Source: Adineta vaga (taxonomy: Eukaryota; Animalia; Rotifera). From it: a DNA stretch of 64,000 bases. Position numbers and translations under genes: made by a program. The stretch covers positions 11,098,001 to 11,162,000 of the forward strand of contig CP075497.1 of assembly GCA_021613535.1 (NCBI GenBank), read 5' to 3'. Of this stretch, positions 4,416 to 16,585 are shown in pieces; positions within the stretch are counted from its first letter, which is position 1, and the number at the start of each line of letters is the position of its first letter. The notes below the pieces were generated by a model, which was given only the letters and a program-made list of their open reading frames with translations, ran no database searches and was not told where the DNA came from.

Positions 4416-7305
4416 ATGCTTGATGAATATCGTAGTCGAGCATCGTTTTGTCCAAAACGTATGCGAAATATATTTGATGATGAAGCATCACAAGCTTATC
4501 GAGTAAGATGAAAAATTCAATCATCAAATTCAATCACATTTAGTATTATTAGACAAAAGTCTGGTCCATATTAGGATCTAAACCTGTATTTCGTCAACCA
4601 CAATTTCCAATACCAATCGATGAATATAAACATTTAACATATCTTCGTTGTAAAGAATTAATTCAAGCAAATTTATTAAGCGATGATGAAATGTTCGACA
4701 ATCCTCGACATAAAATTATTCTTGAACAATGTCTCGCTATGTATGATTCATCATGTCATGCAAAATATACACTTTCAATGACAGTTTTTCGTGAAACAAT
4801 TCGAACATTAGGAACACAAAGACATGAATATATTTTAGATCTTGATCAAAACCATCAAGTGAGGAGAAGAAAAAATCCAGTTATAGTTTTTGTTTATTAA
4901 ATACAATTCAATTTGAAATTAGATTTTCGGTTGTTTTGCTTTAACTGAATTAGCACATGGAAGTAATACGAAAGAAATGCGAACAAGAGCAACATACGAT
5001 CCATCAACCCAAGTAAATTTTCATATTTATTTAAGAAAACTTCTGTTTAATTTGTATATATATATCTGTTTATTAAAGGAATTTGTTTTAAATACACCTG
5101 ATATTGAAGCAATGAAATTCTGGGTTGGGTAAATAATAATATCTTGTGTCCAGTTCCTATTAAAATAAGAACGTGTTTTTTTTTAGTAACTTGGGTTATC
5201 AAGCAACACATGCTGTTGTTTATGCACAACTTTACACACAGAATACTTGTTATGGACTTCATCCATTTGTTGTACCAATTCGGTAGATAGTACTAATGAT
5301 GTTACAGAACATAGTTTGAGATGATATTCAATTGTAGTGATCCATTGACATATAAAACATTTCCTGGAGTTGAAGCTGGTGATATTGGAGCCAAATGTGG
5401 ATGGAATGGTATTGATAATGGGTATTGAAATGATTAATGAATTTTGACATTAAAAGAATGTTGAATTTTTTAGTTTCGTAATGTTTCGTAATTATCGAAT
5501 TCCACGAGAAAATCTTCTTAACAAACATGGTGATGTTTTACCAGATGGAACCTATAAAACGCAATTTAAGGTAACAGAGCATAAATATGAAGTTTTACAA
5601 CTCATAGACAGATTTGTTTGAGAACGAATAGACATTAGATAGAAGCTTTCAAAGTTTCGATCTTTATCTAGTAGTTTTCACTCAGAAGAAAAGAATAATT
5701 GTGCACTGTTTCTTTTGCATTTCTAGACATCAAACAAACGATTTGGAGCTAGTCTTGGTGCATTATCATCTGGTCGTGTTGGTATCAGTAGTTTAGCAAT
5801 CGGTTTATTAATTAATTGTAGTACAATTGCAATTCGATATTCATGTGTTCGAAAACAATTTGGACCATCACCTGGTGTCGAAATACCAGTTATTGAATAT
5901 CAAACTCAAGTATTTAAATATTTTCTTCAATGATTCATTAAAAGCTTTTTTCTCTCTCTGTCTCTCTTTAAGAATTGGCGTTTAATTCCAATTGTTGCAT
6001 CACTCTATGTTTTTCGTACATTAGCATTATCAGTTTTTGATAATCTTGCTGAATTCTATGCATTGTCGATGTCACGTGATGAAAGTGATCAAGATTTACT
6101 TGCAGATATGGGTCGAGAACTTCATGCGCTATCATGTACATGTAAAGCCATCTGTACTTGGAATACACAAAAGGCATGTCAAGAATGTCGCGAAGCATGC
6201 GGTGGTCATGGATATTTATATGGTAGATTAATATCATCAAATAATTGATTATTAAATTTCTCTATCTTTTCTTTTTAGCAACTGGTTTTGGTAATATTCG
6301 AAATGATAATGATCCGTCATGCACATTTGAAGGTGATAATAATGTTTTATTACAACAAGCATCAAATTATATTTTATCGACGTATGAAGATCTTTATTCA
6401 AACAGTAAGTTTTAATCTGAACAAAAAATCTATATTCAATTGCAATGATTTGTTTTCTTGATTTGTAAAGATATAGAAATTCATAGTCCATTTGAAAGTA
6501 TTTTTTTTATTAAACAAATGAAAAATGTCCTTCAAAATAATCGTTGTTCAATTACACCTGAATGTCATACGAAAGGTAAGGTGTTCTTTAATGATGAAAA
6601 TATATTCATCTAACTAAGATTTATTTGTCTATAGATTTAATCAATGCCGTTGAATGGCTCTTATGTTATATTCTTGACAAATCGACACGAAAAATAAATC
6701 AATTAACAACACGTGGAAATCTATCAGCATTTGATTTAAAAAATACAGCACAAGTTTATCATCTTCGTTCATTGTCGCTTATTTATATTCAAGTAATGAA
6801 GAAATCTTCGTTGTTTGTATTTAAAAATCTTAAACAAAATTTCTTTCATATTTTAGCGAACAGCAATTGTTCGATTTTTACATTATATTGAAAATAACGA
6901 AGAAATGGATACAAAATGTAAATTTGTCTTGGAAAAATTATTAATAGTTCATACATTGAAATTTCTGGAAGAAAATCTCACACTATTATTTGAAGGAAAT
7001 TATTTGACAAATGGTTCGATTAGTCTTTGGATACAAAATCGTTTAATTGATTTATGTCATGATTTACGAAATGAAGCTGCTGCATTGGTCGACGTTTTTG
7101 CACCACCTGATCATATTCTTAATTCAGTTTTAGGTGTTAGTGATGGAAAAGTACGTTACTATTCATTTGTATTATTAAAATACAATTCTATTTATGCATA
7201 TTTTAGGTTTATGAAGCAATAAATAAAGTTATACATACAAATAAACATACATTTGTAACACCAACATGGATTAAAGAAGATTTAAAGCAACGTAGTAAAC
7301 TATAA
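4416..7305 (+). CDS. ACOX3: Peroxisomal acyl-CoA oxidase 3-like, multi-exon
   Basis: N-terminal [10 protein letters not shown], then [63 protein letters not shown] and [13 protein letters not shown]. Ends ...QRSKL* (PTS1 signal). Confidence 0.93.
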
Positions 7306-7917: not shown

Positions 7918-10900
7918 ATGCGTTTATATGCTTTACATAAACGTCAAATTGCGGTTGTTTTTGCCCTTTTCTTTATTGGTTTGTTGATCACTCTTATAAT
8001 TGGTATCTCTGGTCCTTCCGTTATCCAAACAAATGATCTGAAATTAATTAATCATCCGAATCAATTAGTAAATAATGTTCTTTTTCTTTTGAAAGTTTTT
8101 AAACAAAAAATGTTCTTTTTATCATTGTAGTCTGGTCCATATAAACTTGAATCAAGTTATCTCGATAAATTTCATCAACGTCTTTGGTTAACTATGAAAT
8201 CTACAACTGATTTAGATGGTAAGTATTCAAAAGAAAACGGGAATGAGAATATATATTGTTGAAGTGAATTTCATAAATGAAATCAATATTGAGCTTACTT
8301 ATGGAAATGACTTCAACATTATAGATATTTTATTTGAGAAGCTAAAAATTTAATAAAATGTTTCTTTTTCTTTTTAATATTTATTGAAGATGAGTTTCGT
8401 CAATCAATCAATGTCACTATATCTAGAAATAATCCATCTTCGTCATCAAATTCATCAATATATGAACGTCAACGAATGATTCATTGTCAAAAACAAGTTA
8501 GTACTAAAGAATGAAAAGAAAAGCTTTCAAAAGTTAAATTGAGGTGGAGGAGGAGGAGGAGAAGATGAATAGATGACTTTTGTTGGTTGTGTGAATGACG
8601 TTGATGGTACTAGACCTGACGTTGATTTCACAACACGTGTTGCTTGTCCATTTGTTTTTGGTGGAACTTTTACATGATAAGTACCACCACATAAAGGTGC
8701 TGAGGGTGATTGATGAACAACACGTTCTTGAATAACAGGTGGTGGTTTCGATGGTACTTCTACAACTTGATAAACATATTGTTTTGGTTGAGGAACAACA
8801 ACAACTCGTTCGATGACATCTGGTGGTGGATCAGGTAATCGTTGTCGTACAACTTGAATTTGTGGTGGAGGTTCAGGTGCATAGTAGATTTCTTGAATAT
8901 GTTGTGGTTGATAATCGATAGATATTGATGTATTGCAACAAGGTAAAAATGTTGTATGATTAGAAGAACTATCAACGTCAAGGACAGTATTGTATAGATA
9001 GGCCATTATAAGTTAAAATGCAATTTGATCAAGAATATTTAGGGCTTTTAAATAGAGTCAACGATGGAAATCGTGTTTTTCTATAACTCGTGTAAATAGT
9101 GATGTTTGTTTATCGCAGTCATGCAAGCATGACCAAGTTATGGTAAAATAGTATTTATGATAATAAAGAATATGTTTATGTGTTTTTATCGAACCCTCAT
9201 GTGTCCTTAAGAAGCATAAAAAAAAGAATATTTTCGTTGTAAATTAGTAGAACACTTAAATATGTTTTTCTACGCATCAAATACATTTAAAAGGAAAAAA
9301 AATAAGCTTGCTGCTTATCTGATGTTAAACTAGGAGGTAAATTAGAATGCTAAAGATATCTAATGTGATAACAAATTACTTTACTCGTGATGTAGTAAAT
9401 ATTTTCGCTTAGGTACAAACGTTATCTAGATAATATGAACTAATTGACTAGCTTTTGAATAAATTGTTTTCATCTTATAAATGTATCTTTTTAAAAAAAG
9501 TCGAAACATATTAATCATTGTAGACAAAATAAACGAACTACACTGATTTGTCATTAGAAGCATATTAATTGTTGTTTAGATCATTAGCAAATAGAAAGAA
9601 ACTTCATTTGATTCATGACTTTGACCTTTCTTTGTCACCTAATAAAATATTAATCAAAATCAAATCTTGTTCTCAATTTCTTTCGTATATGATAAATGAG
9701 CGTCTGCGATCTTAGATCATTGAGTGTATTTATCGCAGTATACGGAAAAAAATGTATATATTGCTTGCATTGTTCTTTACTTAGATGTAATCGTATTATG
9801 CATATTCATATGTGCTATTTTATTAATCACCTTCGAATAGAGGGTTCATAAACGTTTGTTTCTATACATATTCAAAGCCACATATATGTAAATATGCTCG
9901 TTCGAGCGAAGCACGTGCTATAATACACGATCGCAACTAATCAAATCGATCGCGCAATATGTACCTTTTTTGCAATTACATGCGCATCATTCTAATTAAG
10001 AAAGAAGGTTCTTCTTTTCCTTATTCTCCTATCATTTATCAATGAACAAGCGTAGAACAAAAAGAAATTGTTTGCAAATGTACAATAGTGTCCGTAAACC
10101 TTGATGTGCTCGAATAAGCAATGCTACATGTAACTGCCCTTCGCTCTCTGAATCCAATTTTTTTTATATATATTACCGAGACTGATCAGGGTCAGGAGAG
10201 AAAAAAAGATGTTCATGGTCGCGAAGCAAGTGTCCTATAAATACACCTGTTTCTTAGCAGTCTATTTCATATACTATTGAACGCCCTCACGATATACAAT
10301 ATCTTCTTCGTCAAATTTTAGGTGAGCATTGTTGAGTTTTATATTTCTTTTTTTTCCACTATTCTCAGCCTTTTTTAATATAACCGTTGTCGCCATCATC
10401 ACCATCACCATCACCAGGAATACTAACATATAGAATATATCAACTTCTGTAGATCATCTTTTATGATGGTTTATGTGTATTCTGTATATATAATAAAGAG
10501 ACAGAAAGAGGCCAAGAAGGAGATAAATATATATGAGAAGAATGATGAATCCTTAGTCTATACTCTCGATATTGATGAAAATCAATAGATATTAATTGAG
10601 TTCTCGTTCAAATATATTGAACAGATATCTCTATCTCTATCTATGTATATATATATATATATACATGACGAGTATATAGTGTTCCGAAAAAGATCCCTAG
10701 TATTCTTCTGAATGCTCTCGTATTTATAAAGCACAAATAGTTTGAGTAAACCCACACAGGAATGGGTCCTTACAATCAATTTACAACGCAAACAGCAACT
10801 TACACATCGTCTTCAAGACTACAAGAAAGCAGCAACGGATCAGTTGGTGGTGTTACACAGAACATTAGCAACCCTGGCGGTCATAAAGGCCATGGAAAAC

Positions 10901-13900
10901 GATCTAGTACTACAACAAGTACAAGCTCATCAAGCTCATACAATTACAAACGCTATCCAGCTGGGTCGTATACTCAAAAGCAGGCTGCAGTTGGAGGCAG
11001 TGTTGGTGGAAGTACTTATTATGAACAGCAACAATATAACACAAGTAGTGGTGGAGGAGCTTATGGAACTTTTAGTGGTTATGGTGAATCTTATTATGGA
11101 AGTGAAGCTGGCTGTAAGTCAGGTGACATGTATCAAAATCGTCGACAAGGACGTATTCGTCGTCAAGCTATACGTTTACCGGATCAACCGGGCCCTGTAA
11201 GACAGGTTCGGCATCGAATGCCTACACCAGAACCAGATATACTTGAACGCGTTTATATTCGTCGGCAGCCAAGTGAAATTGTAGAAGAAATTATTGAAGA
11301 ACCAACTACTCCACCACCACGTATTCAAGAACGTACTGTTTATGAACCATCTGAACCACCACAAGTCGTACGTAAAGTTATTCGTGTACCACCTCGTAGT
11401 CATGCTTGTCCGATTCATCAACAAGAAACATTGAATCAATATGGAAGTTCTAGTGGTGCAAATACACCAGCAGCTGGTGGTGGAGCTTACGGTGCTGGAT
11501 ATGGACATACAGGACAAGGCTATAATACTAGTGGTACATATTATCAAAATAATAACAATAATCATGGTAATCATCACCATCATCAACAACAACAACAACC
11601 ACAACAGCATCATCATCAACAAGTACAACAACCACCACAAGGTTACGGACCTCAACAACAAGCTCCACAAGGATATGGACCTCAACAACAAGTTCCACAA
11701 GGATATGGACAGACTGGTTATGAAAGATATCAAGGATCACAGGCACCAGCAGGTAGTGCTCCGTTCGGTTATAATCCAGCCAATATACAAGGTGTAGCCA
11801 ATACCGGAATGTATCCACCTCAAGCAGGAGCGCCGCCACCAAACTTCTCACAAAATGCTTTCTGCTTTGATGTAACTGGTGCTGGTGCCCCAACGTCTTA
11901 CGCATCCCAATCCGCTCTTTCTAGTTATGGTGCAAATCCTCAGGGCTTTGGTGGACTACCAAGAGCCGCACATTTCGGAACCCAAGGGTTTACTTTCGGA
12001 GGAGCTGCTCAGAATTATAACGGAGCAGCAGGTTCTGGACTAGCACCGGGAGTAGGAGCAGCTCCGGGTCTAGGATTAACACCAGGTTTAGGAGTAACAC
12101 AGGGTTTAGGAGCAACAGGGGGTTTAGGACTAACACCAGGTTATGGTGCAGGAACTAGTTACGGAGTCACGCAATTTGGTGGATTAGGAGGTTTTCCTAG
12201 TAGCACTTTTGGTGGTGGTGCATCAGGTTTTGGTGGCGGCTTTGGTGGGGGGTTAAGTACCATCGGCAACTATGCTGCTGATGGTAGCTTCGGAGGTGGA
12301 TCATTCGGTCAAGGCCTAGCAGGTTATGGAGCACAAATTAATCCGTTCGCTGGAAGTTTTAGTGGTGGTGCAATGTCTGGTTTTGGTGGATTTGGTGGTA
12401 CTGGGTTCAGCAGCTCAATGGGTGGTTTAGGTGGATATGGCAGCTCTATTGGCGGCTTTGGTGGCCTTCCATTTGCTAGTAGTGCTTCGTTTGGTGGATT
12501 AAGCCCATGCTGTCCTCCACCATGTCCAATGCCATGCCCGCCAATGCATTGTCCAATGCCATGCCCACCGATGCATTGTCCAATGCCATGTCCTCCACCT
12601 TGTCCTCCACCACCAATTATTCAACACGTACCATGCCCAGTACCTGTACCTGTACCTCAACCATGCCCTGTACCTGTGCCACAACTTTGTCCTGTTCCTG
12701 TACCTCAACCATGTCCAGTTCCAGTTCCTGTTCGCGAATGCATTCCTGTTCCGTAAGTAGCTATTTTTTCATTCATTCATAATATTTAGAAATTACATTT
12801 CAAATCTCTTTCCTTATAGACATCCTGTACCATGTCCTGTACCGGTCCCAGTTCCACAACCTCAAATCCAAGTATGTTAAGAAACATTTTCATTGAAAAT
12901 GGATTTTATTGTTTACAATGACTATCTTTTTTTACTTCGTAATTGTAGTGTGTACCTGTCCCTGTTCCTCAACCATATCCAGTAGCTTGCCCTGTACCAG
13001 TTGAACGAGTGGTTTGTCAGCCAGTGTAAGTATCTTAAATGAAACAAATATATTCATTGATTTTTTTTCTTCTTCATTTCTGTTTTCGTCTTTTAGTTGT
13101 ATTCCTGTTCCTCAACCATGTCCACAACCCTACCCTGTTCCTGTACCACAACCTTGCCCAGTCCCTGTTCCTGTTCCAGGTCCTACTCAAGTAAGCTACA
13201 TGAAAATTCATCATTATTTTCTGTCATATATCATCAATCATATTAACTATAAATTATTACGCATACTTTTTCTTTCAATAGTGTGTACCCGTTCCTGTAC
13301 CTCAACCATGCCCTGTTCCTGTACCACAACCTTGCCCTGTTCCTGTTCCTTGTCCTGGTCCACCACAATGTATACCTGTGCCTGTACCTGTTCCTTGTCC
13401 TTGTCCACCTCCTCCAATGTGCTGTCCACCTCCTCCAATGTGCTGCCCACCTCCTCCAATGTGTTGCCCACCTCCTCCAATGTTCTGTCCACCTCCTCCA
13501 ATGTGTTGTCCACCTCCTCCAATGTGCTGTCCACCACCACCGATGTGTTGTCCACCCCCACCGATGTGCTGTCCACCACCGCCGATGTGCTGTCCAAATC
13601 CCTGTGGTCCTTTTGGTGGCGGGTATGTCAAGGATTCGATTGCTTCGCTTGCTTCATTTCCCATTTTGCTTTGCACTATAGGTTGGGAGCTTATGGAGGT
13701 TCATTAGGAGGCTTCGGCAGCGGCCTAGCAGCCTATGGTGGACCTCTCGGAGGGTATCGCTAGCTAGAAACATAGTTCGATGAAATCGATTAATTGAAAT
13801 TTTATCTATTTTTAGTGGTTTTGGTGGAATCTGTGGTGTACCAATTGGCTTTGGTTTTACGACGACTGTTGGTGGTAGTTTAGATCCTTTTACAGATGAT

Positions 13901-16585
13901 TTATACAGTGGATCTCTTTCATATGGTGGTGGGTATGGTGGTGGGTATGGTGGCGGATATGGTCCCGGATATGGATTTACAGCATCTGGTTTACCATCAC
14001 GTGGTATCGGTGGATTCAATCGTGGACTAGGTCGAGCTCCTTATAGACAGTTATTCTAAAAAAAAACCATTTATTAATCGATCAAAATCCCGAATGAATT
14101 AATTAAACATGCAGGAACAAAAACAATAATTCTTATTATTGTTACGCTTTTAACCATCTGTCACTCGTACGAATCTATCAGTGACCGTTACAAACGAGTT
14201 CCTTCTCCTATTCTTTTTTTATCTTTCTCAGATTTTTTATTTACACCTTATTTTAGACACATTTTATACTGACTTGTTCCCATTTTTCTACACATCATTT
14301 TATATTTTCAATAAGTTTCAATTTTTTCATTTGGTGTTGTTGTCTTGTGTCTTTTACTTTTTCATGTTTCTATGTCATTTATTAATCTGTATGGTTCGAA
14401 ACGTACAGACAATTGTATTGTGTCATTTGTATCTTTTTTTGTTGTGCTATGTATGTGTTCTCACTTTGTTAGGTTTTTCCAAATTTTTTTCTTTATATTA
14501 GTATAATAAATCTATATCTAAATTCTCTTTTGTTTTCTTTCGTATCGTTTATTAGTTTGCGTGTTTTATAGTAAAGTTGATTCGATAAGGTGATTGATTA
14601 CTTGTTATTGTTGTTGTATATCGTTGATATTATCATTGAATGGATATTTGATTACTTGTTATCAATGTTAATCGTGTCACTTAGAAGTACTAATTAATAT
14701 CTAATCGTTGATTGAAACTAAGGCTAGATAGTTCATTAATTGGTTAGCATGAACAGGTGTGATTGATGTGTCTGTATACCTTGAATACTTGTTGTAATGA
14801 TATTAGAAAAGAAAATAAGGTCAAACATAGTTAAATCAAAGAGAATATCTTTTTCGCTCGTATTCATTTACAATGATTGACCATCCTCTTTTTTTCTTAT
14901 TGTTTCTAGGCTTGCAATCAATTGATTGTTTTTCATTTGAGTTTCTTAAATGAAAATAACTATCAATTTGAAGTGAAATTAGATGGAATCAATGAAAAAC
15001 AACATAAAAATCAAATAAAAAATGTTCAATTTTTCGTAAGATTCTCTTTCGTTTTTCAATCATAATCTTTCGAAAATATCATATGATTTGACTTTTTTTG
15101 TAGCTCAATACATTCAATCCAGAATATACTCAATTTGAACTTGTCTTTCGTTTCTTTTTCTTAATTTGTGCTATTATAACAACAGTATGTAGATAATCAT
15201 TGATTTTTTTTCTATTAAAATTTGTAATTTTAAGTGTCTTTTCACAAAATCAATGCGACGATTTTCAATGTTGGATTGGTCATTGGAACAACGATGGATG
15301 ATATTTCTTCTCATCGGTCTCATTTTCTATAACGGTAAATAAAGTTCATTTGCAATCAAGAAATATTGACTCGATGAAATTATTTTTTGCGGTCAGAATC
15401 TTAATTTACCTTATCATTGCCATAAAAGGTCACCTTTCTATGAATAAATGATACATTGTATGATACTAAATGAGGTGAGAAAATACTCATTATATAAAAT
15501 GAAATGTAGAACAATATACATATCAATTAGTTATATATACATATATGAATTTTAATTAAAATTAAGTAACCTTTCCGAAGCTAAAGATGACATTAGAAAG
15601 GTCAACAAAAGAGTTAAATCATCACGAAGTATATTCATATTTAGATCCATTTTATCCATTAACATTCTTACTGAATAATTCGTTTCCATCGATTCTTGAT
15701 GGACTTTTACAAGCAACGTTTCTATCAATATTATTACTGTTTTGGCTGAGTGTTTATCATGGCATTCGTCAAGTTTGTTAGTTATTTTAATCTTTCATTT
15801 TTTATCGAATTTTTTCTTCTTTAGAATATTCGTCGATTTGTTCCATTTTATCTTCCAAAAATTATTCTTATCAGTATTCTTTGGATCGTTTCCATTGTAC
15901 TTTCATCTGCACGTATAGCACAAGAATTTCGTGATCCAATGTATAACATAACAATCGATATTCGACAATTTACGGTAGAATTATTTGATAGGAAAGAAAC
16001 TGACTTTATTGAACATGTATTTAGACATTTCGTATTCTCTTTTATGTGGTTGGAATACTTTATATTCTATATTTACTATTCCTTATTATTCGAGCATTTA
16101 GTGAACTTCGAAATACACCTTATTTTGGTAATGAAACTATTCTAGTCTAGACAAATAGATTTCTCAAACATTCGGTTTCTTTTGTTTAGACATTCGTTTA
16201 AAATTTACAACTGTGTTAATGCTTTGCATTGTATGCATCTTAATTGTCATTATTACTCTTCGATATGGTTCAAGTATTATGGAAGAAAATTTCGTTCCTG
16301 AATTAGCATCACATTATAAGAATTCAGTTGAATTTCTAACATTTTACAGTGTTATTAATTTATATATCTATATATTGACATACGTATATGGTCCAACAAA
16401 AAATGCGGCATTTGATTCATTATTTCGTGATAATCCAGCATTTTCCATGCTGAATGATTCAGAAGATGACGTTGTTTACGGGTAATATATACAAAAACAA
16501 ATTTAAGGATAGAAAATAAAGCTTTCTTGTTGATCTATTTAGATCTGATCATGAAGTATCTCGTTTAACTTCAAGTGATAAATAA
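7918..16585 (+). CDS. TMEM181: TMEM181 (GPR178; Wntless-related membrane protein), multi-exon, with a 6.4 kb intron 8497-14909 containing two nested genes
   Basis: MRLYALHKRQIAVVFALFFIG...GISGP. The exon ending ...IHCQKQ (8496) splices in phase 0 to ACNQLIVFHLSFLN (14910). Later exons give FNPEYTQFELVFRF, DWSLEQRW, DPFYPL, LLLFWLSVYHGIRQ, FYLPKI and DNPAFSMLNDSEDDVVYG. An acceptor at 7907 implies a short upstream exon (possibly ~7657-7694). Confidence 0.9.
8527..9006 (-). CDS. Nested single-exon 159-aa Pro/Val-rich protein (gene A), antisense inside the TMEM181 intron
   Basis: Clean ATG-to-TGA ORF with coding-like composition and no signal peptide. Its core VRQRLPDPPPDVIERV...PPPVIQERVV is homologous to nested gene B. 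Confidence 0.85.
   Translation of the reverse strand: MAYLYNTVLDVDSSSNHTTFLPCCNTSISIDYQPQHIQEIYYAPEPPPQIQVVRQRLPDPPPDVIERVVVVPQPKQYVYQVVEVPSKPPPVIQERVVHQSPSAPLCGGTYHVKVPPKTNGQATRVVKSTSGLVPSTSFTQPTKVIYSSSPPPPPPQFNF
10236..10243 (+). promoter_or_regulatory. TATA box (TATAAATA) of nested gene B; non-coding exon ends at donor 10322, 5'UTR intron 10322-10759
   Basis: TATAAATA at 10236, AG|GTGAGC donor at 10322, and CACACAG acceptor ending 10759, two bases before ATG 10762. Confidence 0.6.
10762..14059 (+). CDS. Nested 956-aa low-complexity structural-type protein (gene B) on the same strand as host TMEM181
   Basis: Exons 10762-12752, 12820-12871, 12949-13025, 13097-13190, 13282-13622, 13682-13753 and 13816-14059 are all GT-AG, phase-consistent and total 2871 nt. 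Domain order is S/T/G/Y head, shared Pro/Val/Glu/Arg domain, N/H/Q-rich, Gly/Phe-rich, VPVPQPCP repeats, CCPPPPM x9, GGGY tail. AATAAA at 14505. Confidence 0.9.
13399..13587 (+). repeat. Coding tandem repeat, 21-nt unit x9, encoding (C/F)CPPPPM
   Basis: TGYTGYCCACCNCCNCCRATG-type units with mostly synonymous variation. The repeat explains the spurious open frames on both strands. Confidence 0.95.

What the first reader, a model, noticed from the sequence alone, without database searches (positions are those of the whole stretch)
8497..14909. Head-to-head pair of paralogous structural-type genes hidden in a giant TMEM181 intron
Seen: most introns in the window are ~50-70 bp, but TMEM181 is split by a 6413-bp intron. 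Exon continuity (IHCQKQ|ACNQLIVFHLSFLN) fits the TMEM181 luminal Cys pair. The intron holds two divergently transcribed genes, A (9006-8527, minus) and B (10762-14059, plus), separated by 1.75 kb of non-coding DNA. They share a domain and both lack signal peptides. Inference: this is a co-regulated two-component cassette, a small core-only subunit plus a large core-and-crosslinking-tail subunit that may co-assemble, inserted into or born within a housekeeping gene.
Basis: partly seen in the sequence, partly recalled or inferred. Interest (0 to 1): 0.85.

Follow-up and report, generated by a model that had tools for sequence, protein, structure and literature searches.

The report
Ancient paralog pair nested in TMEM181
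A 6.4-kb intron of the rotifer Adineta vaga's TMEM181 gene really does hold two expressed, related genes from an undescribed protein family that among named sequences occurs only in rotifers and thorny-headed worms; the nesting is ordinary, and the family's role as a skin-skeleton component is only a guess.

Summary
The window is Adineta vaga chromosome 6. Spliced RNA contigs from two studies join TMEM181 exon 3 (ends 8496) to exon 4 (starts 14910), so the 6413-bp intron is real. It holds gene A (8527-9006, minus, 159 aa) and gene B (10762-14059, plus, 7 coding exons, 956 aa). Both are transcribed. The same intron holds the same head-to-head pair in A. steineri and Rotaria. The A. vaga ohnolog on chromosome 3 keeps B but has lost A.

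A and B share an ~85-aa Arg/Pro/Val/Glu-rich module with no Pfam match and no predicted fold. A profile of it finds 212 protein clusters. Every named one is syndermatan: bdelloids, Brachionus and two acanthocephalans. A-type and B-type modules split before bdelloids and acanthocephalans diverged. They also lie adjacent in Pomphorhynchus, without TMEM181, so the pair was captured by the intron and did not arise there.

Co-assembly and a shared promoter are not supported. The conserved promoter block stays with B where A is lost. An alternative splice gives a tail-only B isoform that lacks the module.

A structural role in the intracytoplasmic lamina is plausible but untested. The scan had already noted the chromosome-3 counterpart (s1-490122).

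The parts
7918..8067 (+). TMEM181 exon 1 (start codon at 7918)
   Evidence: ORF. The contig end before 8131 continues with window 8038-8067. Conserved in the C3 ohnolog and in Rotaria.
8131..8218 (+). TMEM181 exon 2
   Evidence: Joint 8218|8390 in X1, X13 and X14. Matches Pfam TMEM181_GOLD positions 1-26.
8390..8496 (+). TMEM181 exon 3, ending ...IHCQKQ in phase 0
   Evidence: Joints and loose ends. The peptide is conserved in C3, A. steineri and Rotaria.
8497..14909 (+). TMEM181 intron 3, 6413 bp, GT..AG, host of genes A and B
   Evidence: The loose end after 8496 in X1 and X14 equals window 14911 onward. The homologous intron is 5853 bp on C3, about 6.6 kb in A. steineri and about 8.2 kb in Rotaria.
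14910..15035 (+). TMEM181 exon 4, starting ACNQL...
   Evidence: Matches Pfam TMEM181_GOLD positions 72-106, E=9e-7. Conserved.
8527..9006 (-). Gene A CDS, 159 aa, single exon. Its 3' end lies 31 nt from TMEM181 exon 3 on the opposite strand.
   Evidence: ORF. RNA contigs cover 8468-9364, and up to 9524 in X13. 40 bdelloid orthologs.
8632..8901 (-). A-type copy of the shared ~85-90-aa Arg/Pro/Val/Glu-rich module
9888..10262 (+). Conserved non-coding block upstream of B, with TATAAATA at 10236-10243 and a CAGTC initiator-like site near 10258. Inferred to be the B promoter.
   Evidence: 70.7% identity over 324 nt to the C3 ohnolog and 66.8% over 217 nt to a Rotaria-like contig, while the flanks do not align. 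Alignment. No Rfam family matches.
10259..10321 (+). B 5' leader exon. The donor after 10321 is shown. The start is inferred from the TATA box. Some contigs reach upstream to 9914 or 9395.
   Evidence: Joints 10321|10760 (X13) and 10321|12363 (X1, X13, X14). Unspliced contigs also cover 10292-11563.
10762..12752 (+). B coding exon 1 (aa 1-663): S/T/G/Y-rich N-terminus, the shared module, a Q/H/G/Y-rich part, a 34% Gly part, and the start of the Cys/Pro part
11149..11418 (+). B-type copy of the shared module (about aa 130-219)
12363..12363 (+). Internal alternative 3' splice site. Leader exon spliced to 12363 gives a 419-aa tail-only ORF from Met538 that lacks the shared module.
   Evidence: Joint in X1, X13 and X14. 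ORF.
12820..13622 (+). B coding exons 2-5 (12820-12871, 12949-13025, 13097-13190, 13282-13622): VPVPQPCP-type and CCPPPPM repeats
   Evidence: Four GT..AG joints in three runs. The frame closes. A 21-nt unit repeats 9.3 times at 13402-13596.
13682..13753 (+). B coding exon 6, 72 nt, an in-frame cassette exon (included or skipped)
   Evidence: Joints 13622|13682 and 13753|13816, and the skip 13622|13816 in X1 and X13.
13816..14059 (+). B last coding exon, a Gly/Tyr-rich tail, with the stop codon at 14057-14059

Best explanation
Shown:
- Intron 3 of Adineta vaga TMEM181 is a genuine 6.4-kb intron that hosts two independent, transcribed genes.
- Both belong to a multigene family with about 11 loci in this genome. 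The family is defined by an ~85-aa Arg/Pro/Val/Glu-rich module that has no Pfam model and no predicted globular fold. The module is flanked by low-complexity Gly/Tyr/Gln/Ser regions.
- All named family members are syndermatan: Bdelloidea, Monogononta and Acanthocephala.

Inferred from the tree and from synteny:
- A-type and B-type modules are ancient paralogs that were already neighbours in the common ancestor of bdelloids and acanthocephalans.
- In the bdelloid stem, the pair came to lie head-to-head inside TMEM181 intron 3. This happened before the bdelloid genome duplication and before the Adineta-Rotaria split.
- One ohnolog later lost A.

Inferred from composition and distribution only:
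- A and B are cytoplasmic structural proteins.
- The module acts as an extended assembly or anchoring motif.
- B's 34% Gly region and its 47% Pro / 17% Cys region (45 Cys) provide a disulfide-crosslinkable matrix.
- Alternative splicing can produce the tail alone.
For: Junction 8496|14910 and all B introns come from spliced RNA contigs.

The same nesting occurs on C3 (exon ends), in A. steineri and in Rotaria sp. Silwood2. Didymodactylos has the head-to-head pair.

Family size and distribution:
- 212 clusters at E<=1e-3.
- The named ones are Adineta, Rotaria, Didymodactylos, Brachionus calyciflorus, Pomphorhynchus laevis and Neoechinorhynchus agilis.
- 15 exon-level hits at about 11 loci in the A. 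vaga genome.

Tree: bdelloid A groups with the P. laevis second-type module at 95/87. B groups with the P. laevis first-type at 83/95. The AU test rejects a bdelloid-only A+B clade with p=0.033.

P. laevis has alternating B-type and A-type modules on one strand.

There is no Pfam hit. AF2 predicts no secondary structure, with pTM 0.14.

The intracytoplasmic lamina lies within the syncytial integument (PMC13403294). A syncytial epidermis unites Rotifera and Acanthocephala (PMC3426538).
Against: - No localisation, proteomic or quantitative expression data exist; only contigs could be laid.
- Most family members come from unnamed metagenome contigs, so restriction to Syndermata is not proven.
- The tree rests on 90 columns and the AU p-value is only 0.033.
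- A is dispensable at the ohnologous locus.
- Low-complexity Gly/Tyr/Gln proteins can also form condensates rather than a lamina.
- The complex prediction gave no answer.
Confidence: 0.55

Rival explanations
1. A and B are simply neighbouring paralogs with no functional coupling. The linkage reflects tandem-duplication inertia, and the nesting in TMEM181 is a neutral accident of a rearrangement.
For: A was lost from the C3 ohnolog while B and its promoter block were kept. The conserved cis-block is next to B only. B has an isoform without the shared module. Orientation differs between bdelloids (head-to-head) and P. laevis (same strand). The family has about 9 further loci elsewhere in the genome.
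Against: Adjacency of the A-type and B-type is retained in lineages as distant as bdelloids and an acanthocephalan. Head-to-head order is kept across three bdelloid genera.
Confidence: 0.3
2. The family forms cytoplasmic or nuclear condensates, or stress- or desiccation-related gels, through its Gly/Tyr/Gln/FG-rich low-complexity regions. It is not an integument skeleton.
For: B has Q/H/G/Y-rich and GFGG-rich regions. AF2 predicts disorder for the module. There is no signal peptide.
Against: The 265-aa region with 47% Pro and 17% Cys, including nine CCPPPPM units, is typical of crosslinked structural proteins rather than condensate scaffolds. The family also occurs in non-desiccating endoparasitic acanthocephalans.
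Confidence: 0.12
3. A and B are secreted or extracellular matrix proteins (egg shell, trophi, glycocalyx) whose true start codons or signal peptides were missed.
For: The Cys/Pro/Gly-rich composition also occurs in egg-shell and cuticle proteins.
Against: The B leader splice lands 2 nt before the ATG at 10762, and no upstream coding exon is seen. The N-termini are hydrophilic. The A ortholog models start at the same Met.
Confidence: 0.05
4. The giant intron is an assembly or annotation artefact, and the 5' and 3' TMEM181 parts are separate genes.
For: Public gene models in A. steineri and Rotaria annotate the two halves as separate genes.
Against: Spliced RNA contigs join 8496 to 14910 in two studies. 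The GOLD domain is split across the junction. The same exon ends and phase are found in four independent loci.
Confidence: 0.02

Closest known systems
Nested (intronic) genes of animals, for example the many host/nested pairs in Drosophila and vertebrates
   Same: Complete genes with their own promoters lie inside an intron of a larger host gene. One is antisense to the host (A) and one is on the sense strand (B).
   Different: Here two paralogs sit head-to-head in one intron of a genome whose introns are otherwise about 60 bp. The arrangement has been kept since before the bdelloid genome duplication. A host donor occasionally mis-splices to a nested-gene acceptor (8496 to 13816).
Cornified-envelope and hair-matrix proteins of vertebrates (loricrin, SPRR/LCE, keratin-associated proteins) and the sperm protein SMCP. 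This comparison is from general knowledge.
   Same: They are cytoplasmic proteins without signal peptides. They have Gly-loop-like GGF/GGY stretches, a Gln-rich part and Cys-Pro repeats, which suggests a disulfide-crosslinked insoluble matrix.
   Different: No sequence homology was found: no Pfam family reaches E<=1 for any B segment. B also carries a conserved Arg/Pro/Val/Glu module that these families lack. The lineage is different.
Articulins, alveolins and epiplasmins of protist membrane skeletons. This comparison is from general knowledge.
   Same: They have Val/Pro-rich short repeats (VPVP...), are cytoplasmic, and form a lamina under the plasma membrane.
   Different: The resemblance is compositional only. 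No homology test was possible with these tools. The organisms are animals, not protists.
TMEM181 / Wntless-like family (the host gene)
   Same: A GOLD domain plus a WLS-like transmembrane domain.
   Different: None noted, except that the GOLD domain is interrupted by the 6.4-kb intron.

Membership tests
TMEM181 (host gene) | N-terminal TMEM181_GOLD domain (PF21885) | tested here: met
   Exon 2 matches positions 1-26 (E=1e-3). Exon 4 matches positions 72-106 (E=9e-7, above the gathering score). Exons were searched one by one.
TMEM181 (host gene) | Wntless-like transmembrane domain (PF06664) | tested here: met
   The ORF pieces at 15587-15781 and 16213-16485 match with E=2.5e-11 and 2.5e-8.
Nested intronic gene | The whole transcription unit lies between a host donor and acceptor that are joined in RNA | tested here: met
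   Junction 8496|14910. The A and B CDSs and the B leader exon lie within 8497-14909. The 3' end of A's transcript may overlap exon 3 on the antisense strand.
Bidirectional-promoter gene pair | Divergent TSSs under about 1 kb apart that share one regulatory region | tested here: inconclusive
   The two start codons are 1755 bp apart. Contigs cannot give TSSs. The only deeply conserved block lies next to B and persists where A is absent.
Keratin-associated / SPRR / LCE / loricrin families | A match to the family profiles | tested here: not met
   No Pfam family reaches E<=1 for any B segment.
New syndermatan 'RLPxPxPD-IERV' module family (unnamed) | An ~85-aa module with near-invariant R..R.P.P.PD..ER...E.P..PPP..V | tested here: met
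   A and B each carry one copy. The profile finds 212 clusters, 99 of them at E<=1e-10.
CaaX-type lipid-anchored proteins | A Cys at position -4 from the C-terminus | tested here: not met
   A ends ...QFNF and B ends ...RQLF. B keeps only an internal AFCF relic at aa 366-369. About 21 short B-like paralogs do end in CF[YQ]x.

The most novel reading that the evidence does not exclude
The module family, including A and B, is the protein scaffold of the intracytoplasmic lamina, the defining and molecularly uncharacterised apomorphy of Syndermata. The conserved module would nucleate or anchor the lamina under the apical membrane. Some paralogs would attach through a CaaX-like lipid anchor, and Gly- and Cys/Pro-rich tails would crosslink it. 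The A-type/B-type pair has been kept adjacent since before the bdelloid-acanthocephalan split because the two act together.
Probability: 0.25. Interest if true: 0.75.

Novelty: new variant of a known kind. Interest (0 to 1): 0.5.

Why it matters
The nesting itself is ordinary biology, and it corrects public bdelloid gene models that split TMEM181 in two.

The more useful result is a previously undescribed, apparently clade-restricted protein module family whose composition fits an intracellular crosslinked matrix. This gives concrete candidate genes for the intracytoplasmic lamina of rotifers and acanthocephalans. The structure is known from electron microscopy, but I found no component genes for it in the literature searched. 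It also offers a testable case of paralog linkage conserved over a very long time.

Tried and rejected
- Complex prediction of A with B residues 110-230: no answer, score 0.01, controls not run. This is not evidence either way.
- AF2 on the module alignment: no secondary structure, pLDDT 67, pTM 0.14. No fold search was attempted.
- ESM Atlas feature search with A: best hit 0.78 to an unnamed cluster, uninformative.
- Pfam on A, on all B segments and on distant family members: nothing significant. One query (13284-13622) was in the wrong frame, and its weak hits are void.
- Rfam on 8400-15000: only two sub-threshold chance hits.
- Literature searches for lamina, lorica or integument proteins of rotifers found no component genes.
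- TMEM181 exons were not found within 10 kb of the A-B pair on one metagenomic rotifer contig (L015) or in P. laevis.
- Depths from contigs were not used to rank isoforms or to test co-expression.
- The idea that loose ends at 10749 and 10780 reflect trans-splicing was rejected. They match the C3 paralog's transcript.
- Joined models: all database tools were given single exons by reference. Joined CDS models were built only inside scripts. The joined B CDS was used for translation and composition. A joined TMEM181 exon 1-4 model was translated once, in a frame that proved wrong. One joined B C-terminal piece went into a local tblastn against fetched loci.

Full report
**Identity of the window.** The window is contig 6 (11,098,001-11,162,000) of a 100.8-Mb, six-contig genome. 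A family member on contig 5 is the NCBI protein I4U23_025044 of Adineta vaga. The region is AT-rich, at 25-30% GC, and rises to 40-53% GC over gene B.

**The intron is real.**
- Pfam places exon 2 (8131-8218) at positions 1-26 of TMEM181_GOLD and exon 4 (14910-15035) at positions 72-106.
- Downstream ORF pieces match the Wntless-like TM domain.
- I laid Logan contigs of four runs from four studies on 8100-14099. X1, X13 and X14 contain GT..AG joints and are therefore RNA.
- They show the joint 8218|8390 and a contig end before 8131 that continues with 8038-8067.
- In X1 and X14, a contig end after 8496 continues with exactly the sequence at 14911 onward.
- The junction 8496|14910 is thus seen in two studies.
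- The exon-3 end (IHCQKQ, phase 0) and exon-4 start ((A/V)CNQL) are conserved at the chromosome-3 ohnolog, in A. steineri and in Rotaria sp. Silwood2. The same intron is 5853 bp, about 6.6 kb and about 8.2 kb in those three. Both cysteines are conserved. Whether they form a luminal disulfide was not tested.
- Public gene models in those assemblies split TMEM181 into a small 5' gene and a 3' WLS-like_TM gene.

**Gene A.**
- A is a 159-aa single-exon ORF on the minus strand (8527-9006).
- It is covered by RNA contigs in all four runs.
- It has 40 orthologs in bdelloid assemblies and metagenomes at 58-81% identity.
- Between A. vaga and more distant bdelloids, only its CDS aligns at the DNA level. 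This fits purifying selection.
- Its stop codon is 31 nt from TMEM181 exon 3 on the other strand. Contigs run through both, so the transcripts probably overlap.

**Gene B.**
- Six CDS introns (59-91 bp) are each confirmed in three runs. The exons are 10762-12752, 12820-12871, 12949-13025, 13097-13190, 13282-13622, 13682-13753 and 13816-14059, giving 956 aa.
- The 72-nt sixth exon is an in-frame cassette, since a 13622|13816 joint is also seen.
- Upstream, a leader exon ending at 10321 is handled in three ways. It is spliced to 10760, 2 nt before the ATG. It is left unspliced. Or it is spliced to an internal acceptor at 12363, in all three spliced runs.
- The last form encodes a 419-aa tail-only protein from Met538 that lacks the shared module.
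- B is modular. It has an S/T/G/Y-rich N-terminus, the module (about aa 126-215), a Q/H/G/Y-rich part, a 34% Gly part, a 265-aa part with 47% Pro and 17% Cys (45 Cys), and a 38% Gly tail. The Cys/Pro part holds VPVPQPCP-type units and nine CCPPPPM units from a 21-nt repeat with 9.3 copies.
- Neither protein has a hydrophobic N-terminus or a TM-grade segment.

**The spacer.** Positions 9007-10761 are not inert.
- A block at about 9888-10262 aligns to the C3 ohnolog (70.7% over 324 nt) and to a Rotaria-like contig (66.8% over 217 nt), while everything around it has diverged.
- The block ends in TATAAATA (10236) and a CAGTC initiator-like site.
- It sits just upstream of the leader exon, so I read it as B's promoter.
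- It is kept on chromosome 3, where A is absent.
- No Rfam family matches.

**The shared module and its family.**
- A and B align at 46% identity over 61 aa (E=5e-12).
- An alignment of both families and two further A. vaga paralogs (A2) shows an ~85-aa module with near-invariant Arg, Pro, Asp and Glu positions.
- AF2 on this alignment gives no secondary structure (pTM 0.14).
- No Pfam model matches.
- The profile finds 212 cluster representatives at E<=1e-3, 99 of them at E<=1e-10.
- It also finds about 11 loci in A. vaga, mostly as ohnolog pairs on contigs 2/5 and 3/6.
- Every named hit is syndermatan: Adineta vaga, A. ricciae, A. steineri, Rotaria spp., Didymodactylos carnosus, Brachionus calyciflorus, Pomphorhynchus laevis and Neoechinorhynchus agilis. 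The rest are unnamed metagenome proteins, so clade restriction is likely but unproven.

**History of the pair.**
- In a careful ML tree of 47 module sequences, bdelloid A groups with the second-type modules of P. laevis (95/87). B and the short B-like paralogs group with the P. laevis first-type (83/95). Forcing all bdelloid A and B sequences into one clade is rejected (AU p=0.033).
- The data are only 90 columns, so this is moderate support.
- On a P. laevis contig the two types alternate on one strand, at 10466, 14623, 24434, 27299 and 33262. No TMEM181 lies within 10 kb.
- The pair is therefore older than the nesting and was captured by the intron.
- Capture happened before the bdelloid genome duplication, because both ohnologous TMEM181 copies hold a B gene. 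It also happened before the Adineta-Rotaria split.
- Didymodactylos has the head-to-head pair, but its contig ends before TMEM181 could be checked.
- A is single-copy. The chromosome-3 locus has only about 0.5 kb between exon 3 and the promoter block.

**Function.** Nothing here measures function.
- The cytoplasmic, low-complexity, Cys/Pro- and Gly-rich build resembles crosslinked intracellular matrices such as cornified-envelope and hair-matrix proteins. That comparison is from general knowledge, with no homology found.
- The family's known range coincides with the clade united by a syncytial epidermis (PMC3426538) that contains an electron-dense intracytoplasmic lamina (PMC13403294).
- I therefore rank 'lamina component' first, at roughly one in three to one in four.
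- Co-assembly of A with B is untested. The complex job returned no answer.

**Relation to earlier scan notes.**
- s1-490122 (a same-strand gene in a 5853-bp TMEM181 intron on another contig) is the chromosome-3 ohnolog. My exon mapping gives the same length.
- s1-502216 and s1-502327 describe the module and gene B on this same stretch.

**Verdict.**
- The nesting is an ordinary kind of arrangement.
- The protein family is new and worth a bench test.

Noticed in passing
window 8496 -> 13816: In run X14, one RNA contig joins the TMEM181 exon-3 donor to the acceptor of B's last exon (GT..AG). The frame is wrong and a stop follows after about 20 codons. It looks like a mis-splice caused by a same-strand nested gene.
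   Followed up: partly
G000:C3:5781000-5789000 (L003, L006, L009): The ohnologous TMEM181 copy has a 5853-bp intron holding a B paralog (open frame 770 aa) and the conserved promoter block, but no A gene. Loose ends at 10749 and 10780 show that the paralog is transcribed.
   Followed up: partly
window 11857-11868 (B aa 366-369) and proteins P0055-P0068, P0132, P0145, P0160, P0163, P0177: About 21 short B-like paralogs end in a conserved ...AFCF[YQ][VIMA] motif, with Cys at position -4, which resembles a CaaX box. B keeps AFCF internally, exactly where those proteins end. This suggests that B arose by fusion of a short B-like gene with a downstream Gly/Cys-Pro-rich gene, and the tail-only isoform fits that.
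   Followed up: partly
L018 10001-33758 (Pomphorhynchus laevis WNNJ02000754.1): This is a tandem array of units, each with a B-type module ORF followed about 3 kb later by an ORF holding a Gly-rich part, an A-type module, a short CPPPC-type part and a Gly/Tyr tail. The units are annotated as single 835- and 861-aa genes. In this species the Cys/Pro tail is attached to the A-type module.
   Followed up: partly
L015 (ENA ERZ26165376 contig, 1.5 Mb): The A-B head-to-head pair lies next to acyl-CoA oxidase, as in the window, but no TMEM181 exon was detectable within 10 kb on either side. The host gene may have been lost or moved in that rotifer or at that ohnolog.
   Followed up: partly
G000:C2:8811500-8811709 and C5:9783526-9783729 (L004, L005; protein P0072): This is a third module subfamily (212-253 aa) with the module near the middle and a Tyr/Gln-rich C-terminus. 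It forms a long separate branch in the tree. Further module loci lie at C5:8595434, C2:9512310, C3:8298688, C6:8166101, C5:8374207 and C2:9189366.
   Followed up: no
window 8468-8530: Gene A's stop codon is 31 nt from TMEM181 exon 3 on the opposite strand, and RNA contigs run continuously through both. The two mRNAs probably overlap tail-to-body on opposite strands.
   Followed up: no
window 5000-7300: The gene upstream of TMEM181 is an acyl-CoA oxidase, judged from its C-terminal ORF at 6905-7222. The order ACOX, TMEM181, A, B is conserved in Rotaria and on contig 3.
   Followed up: partly
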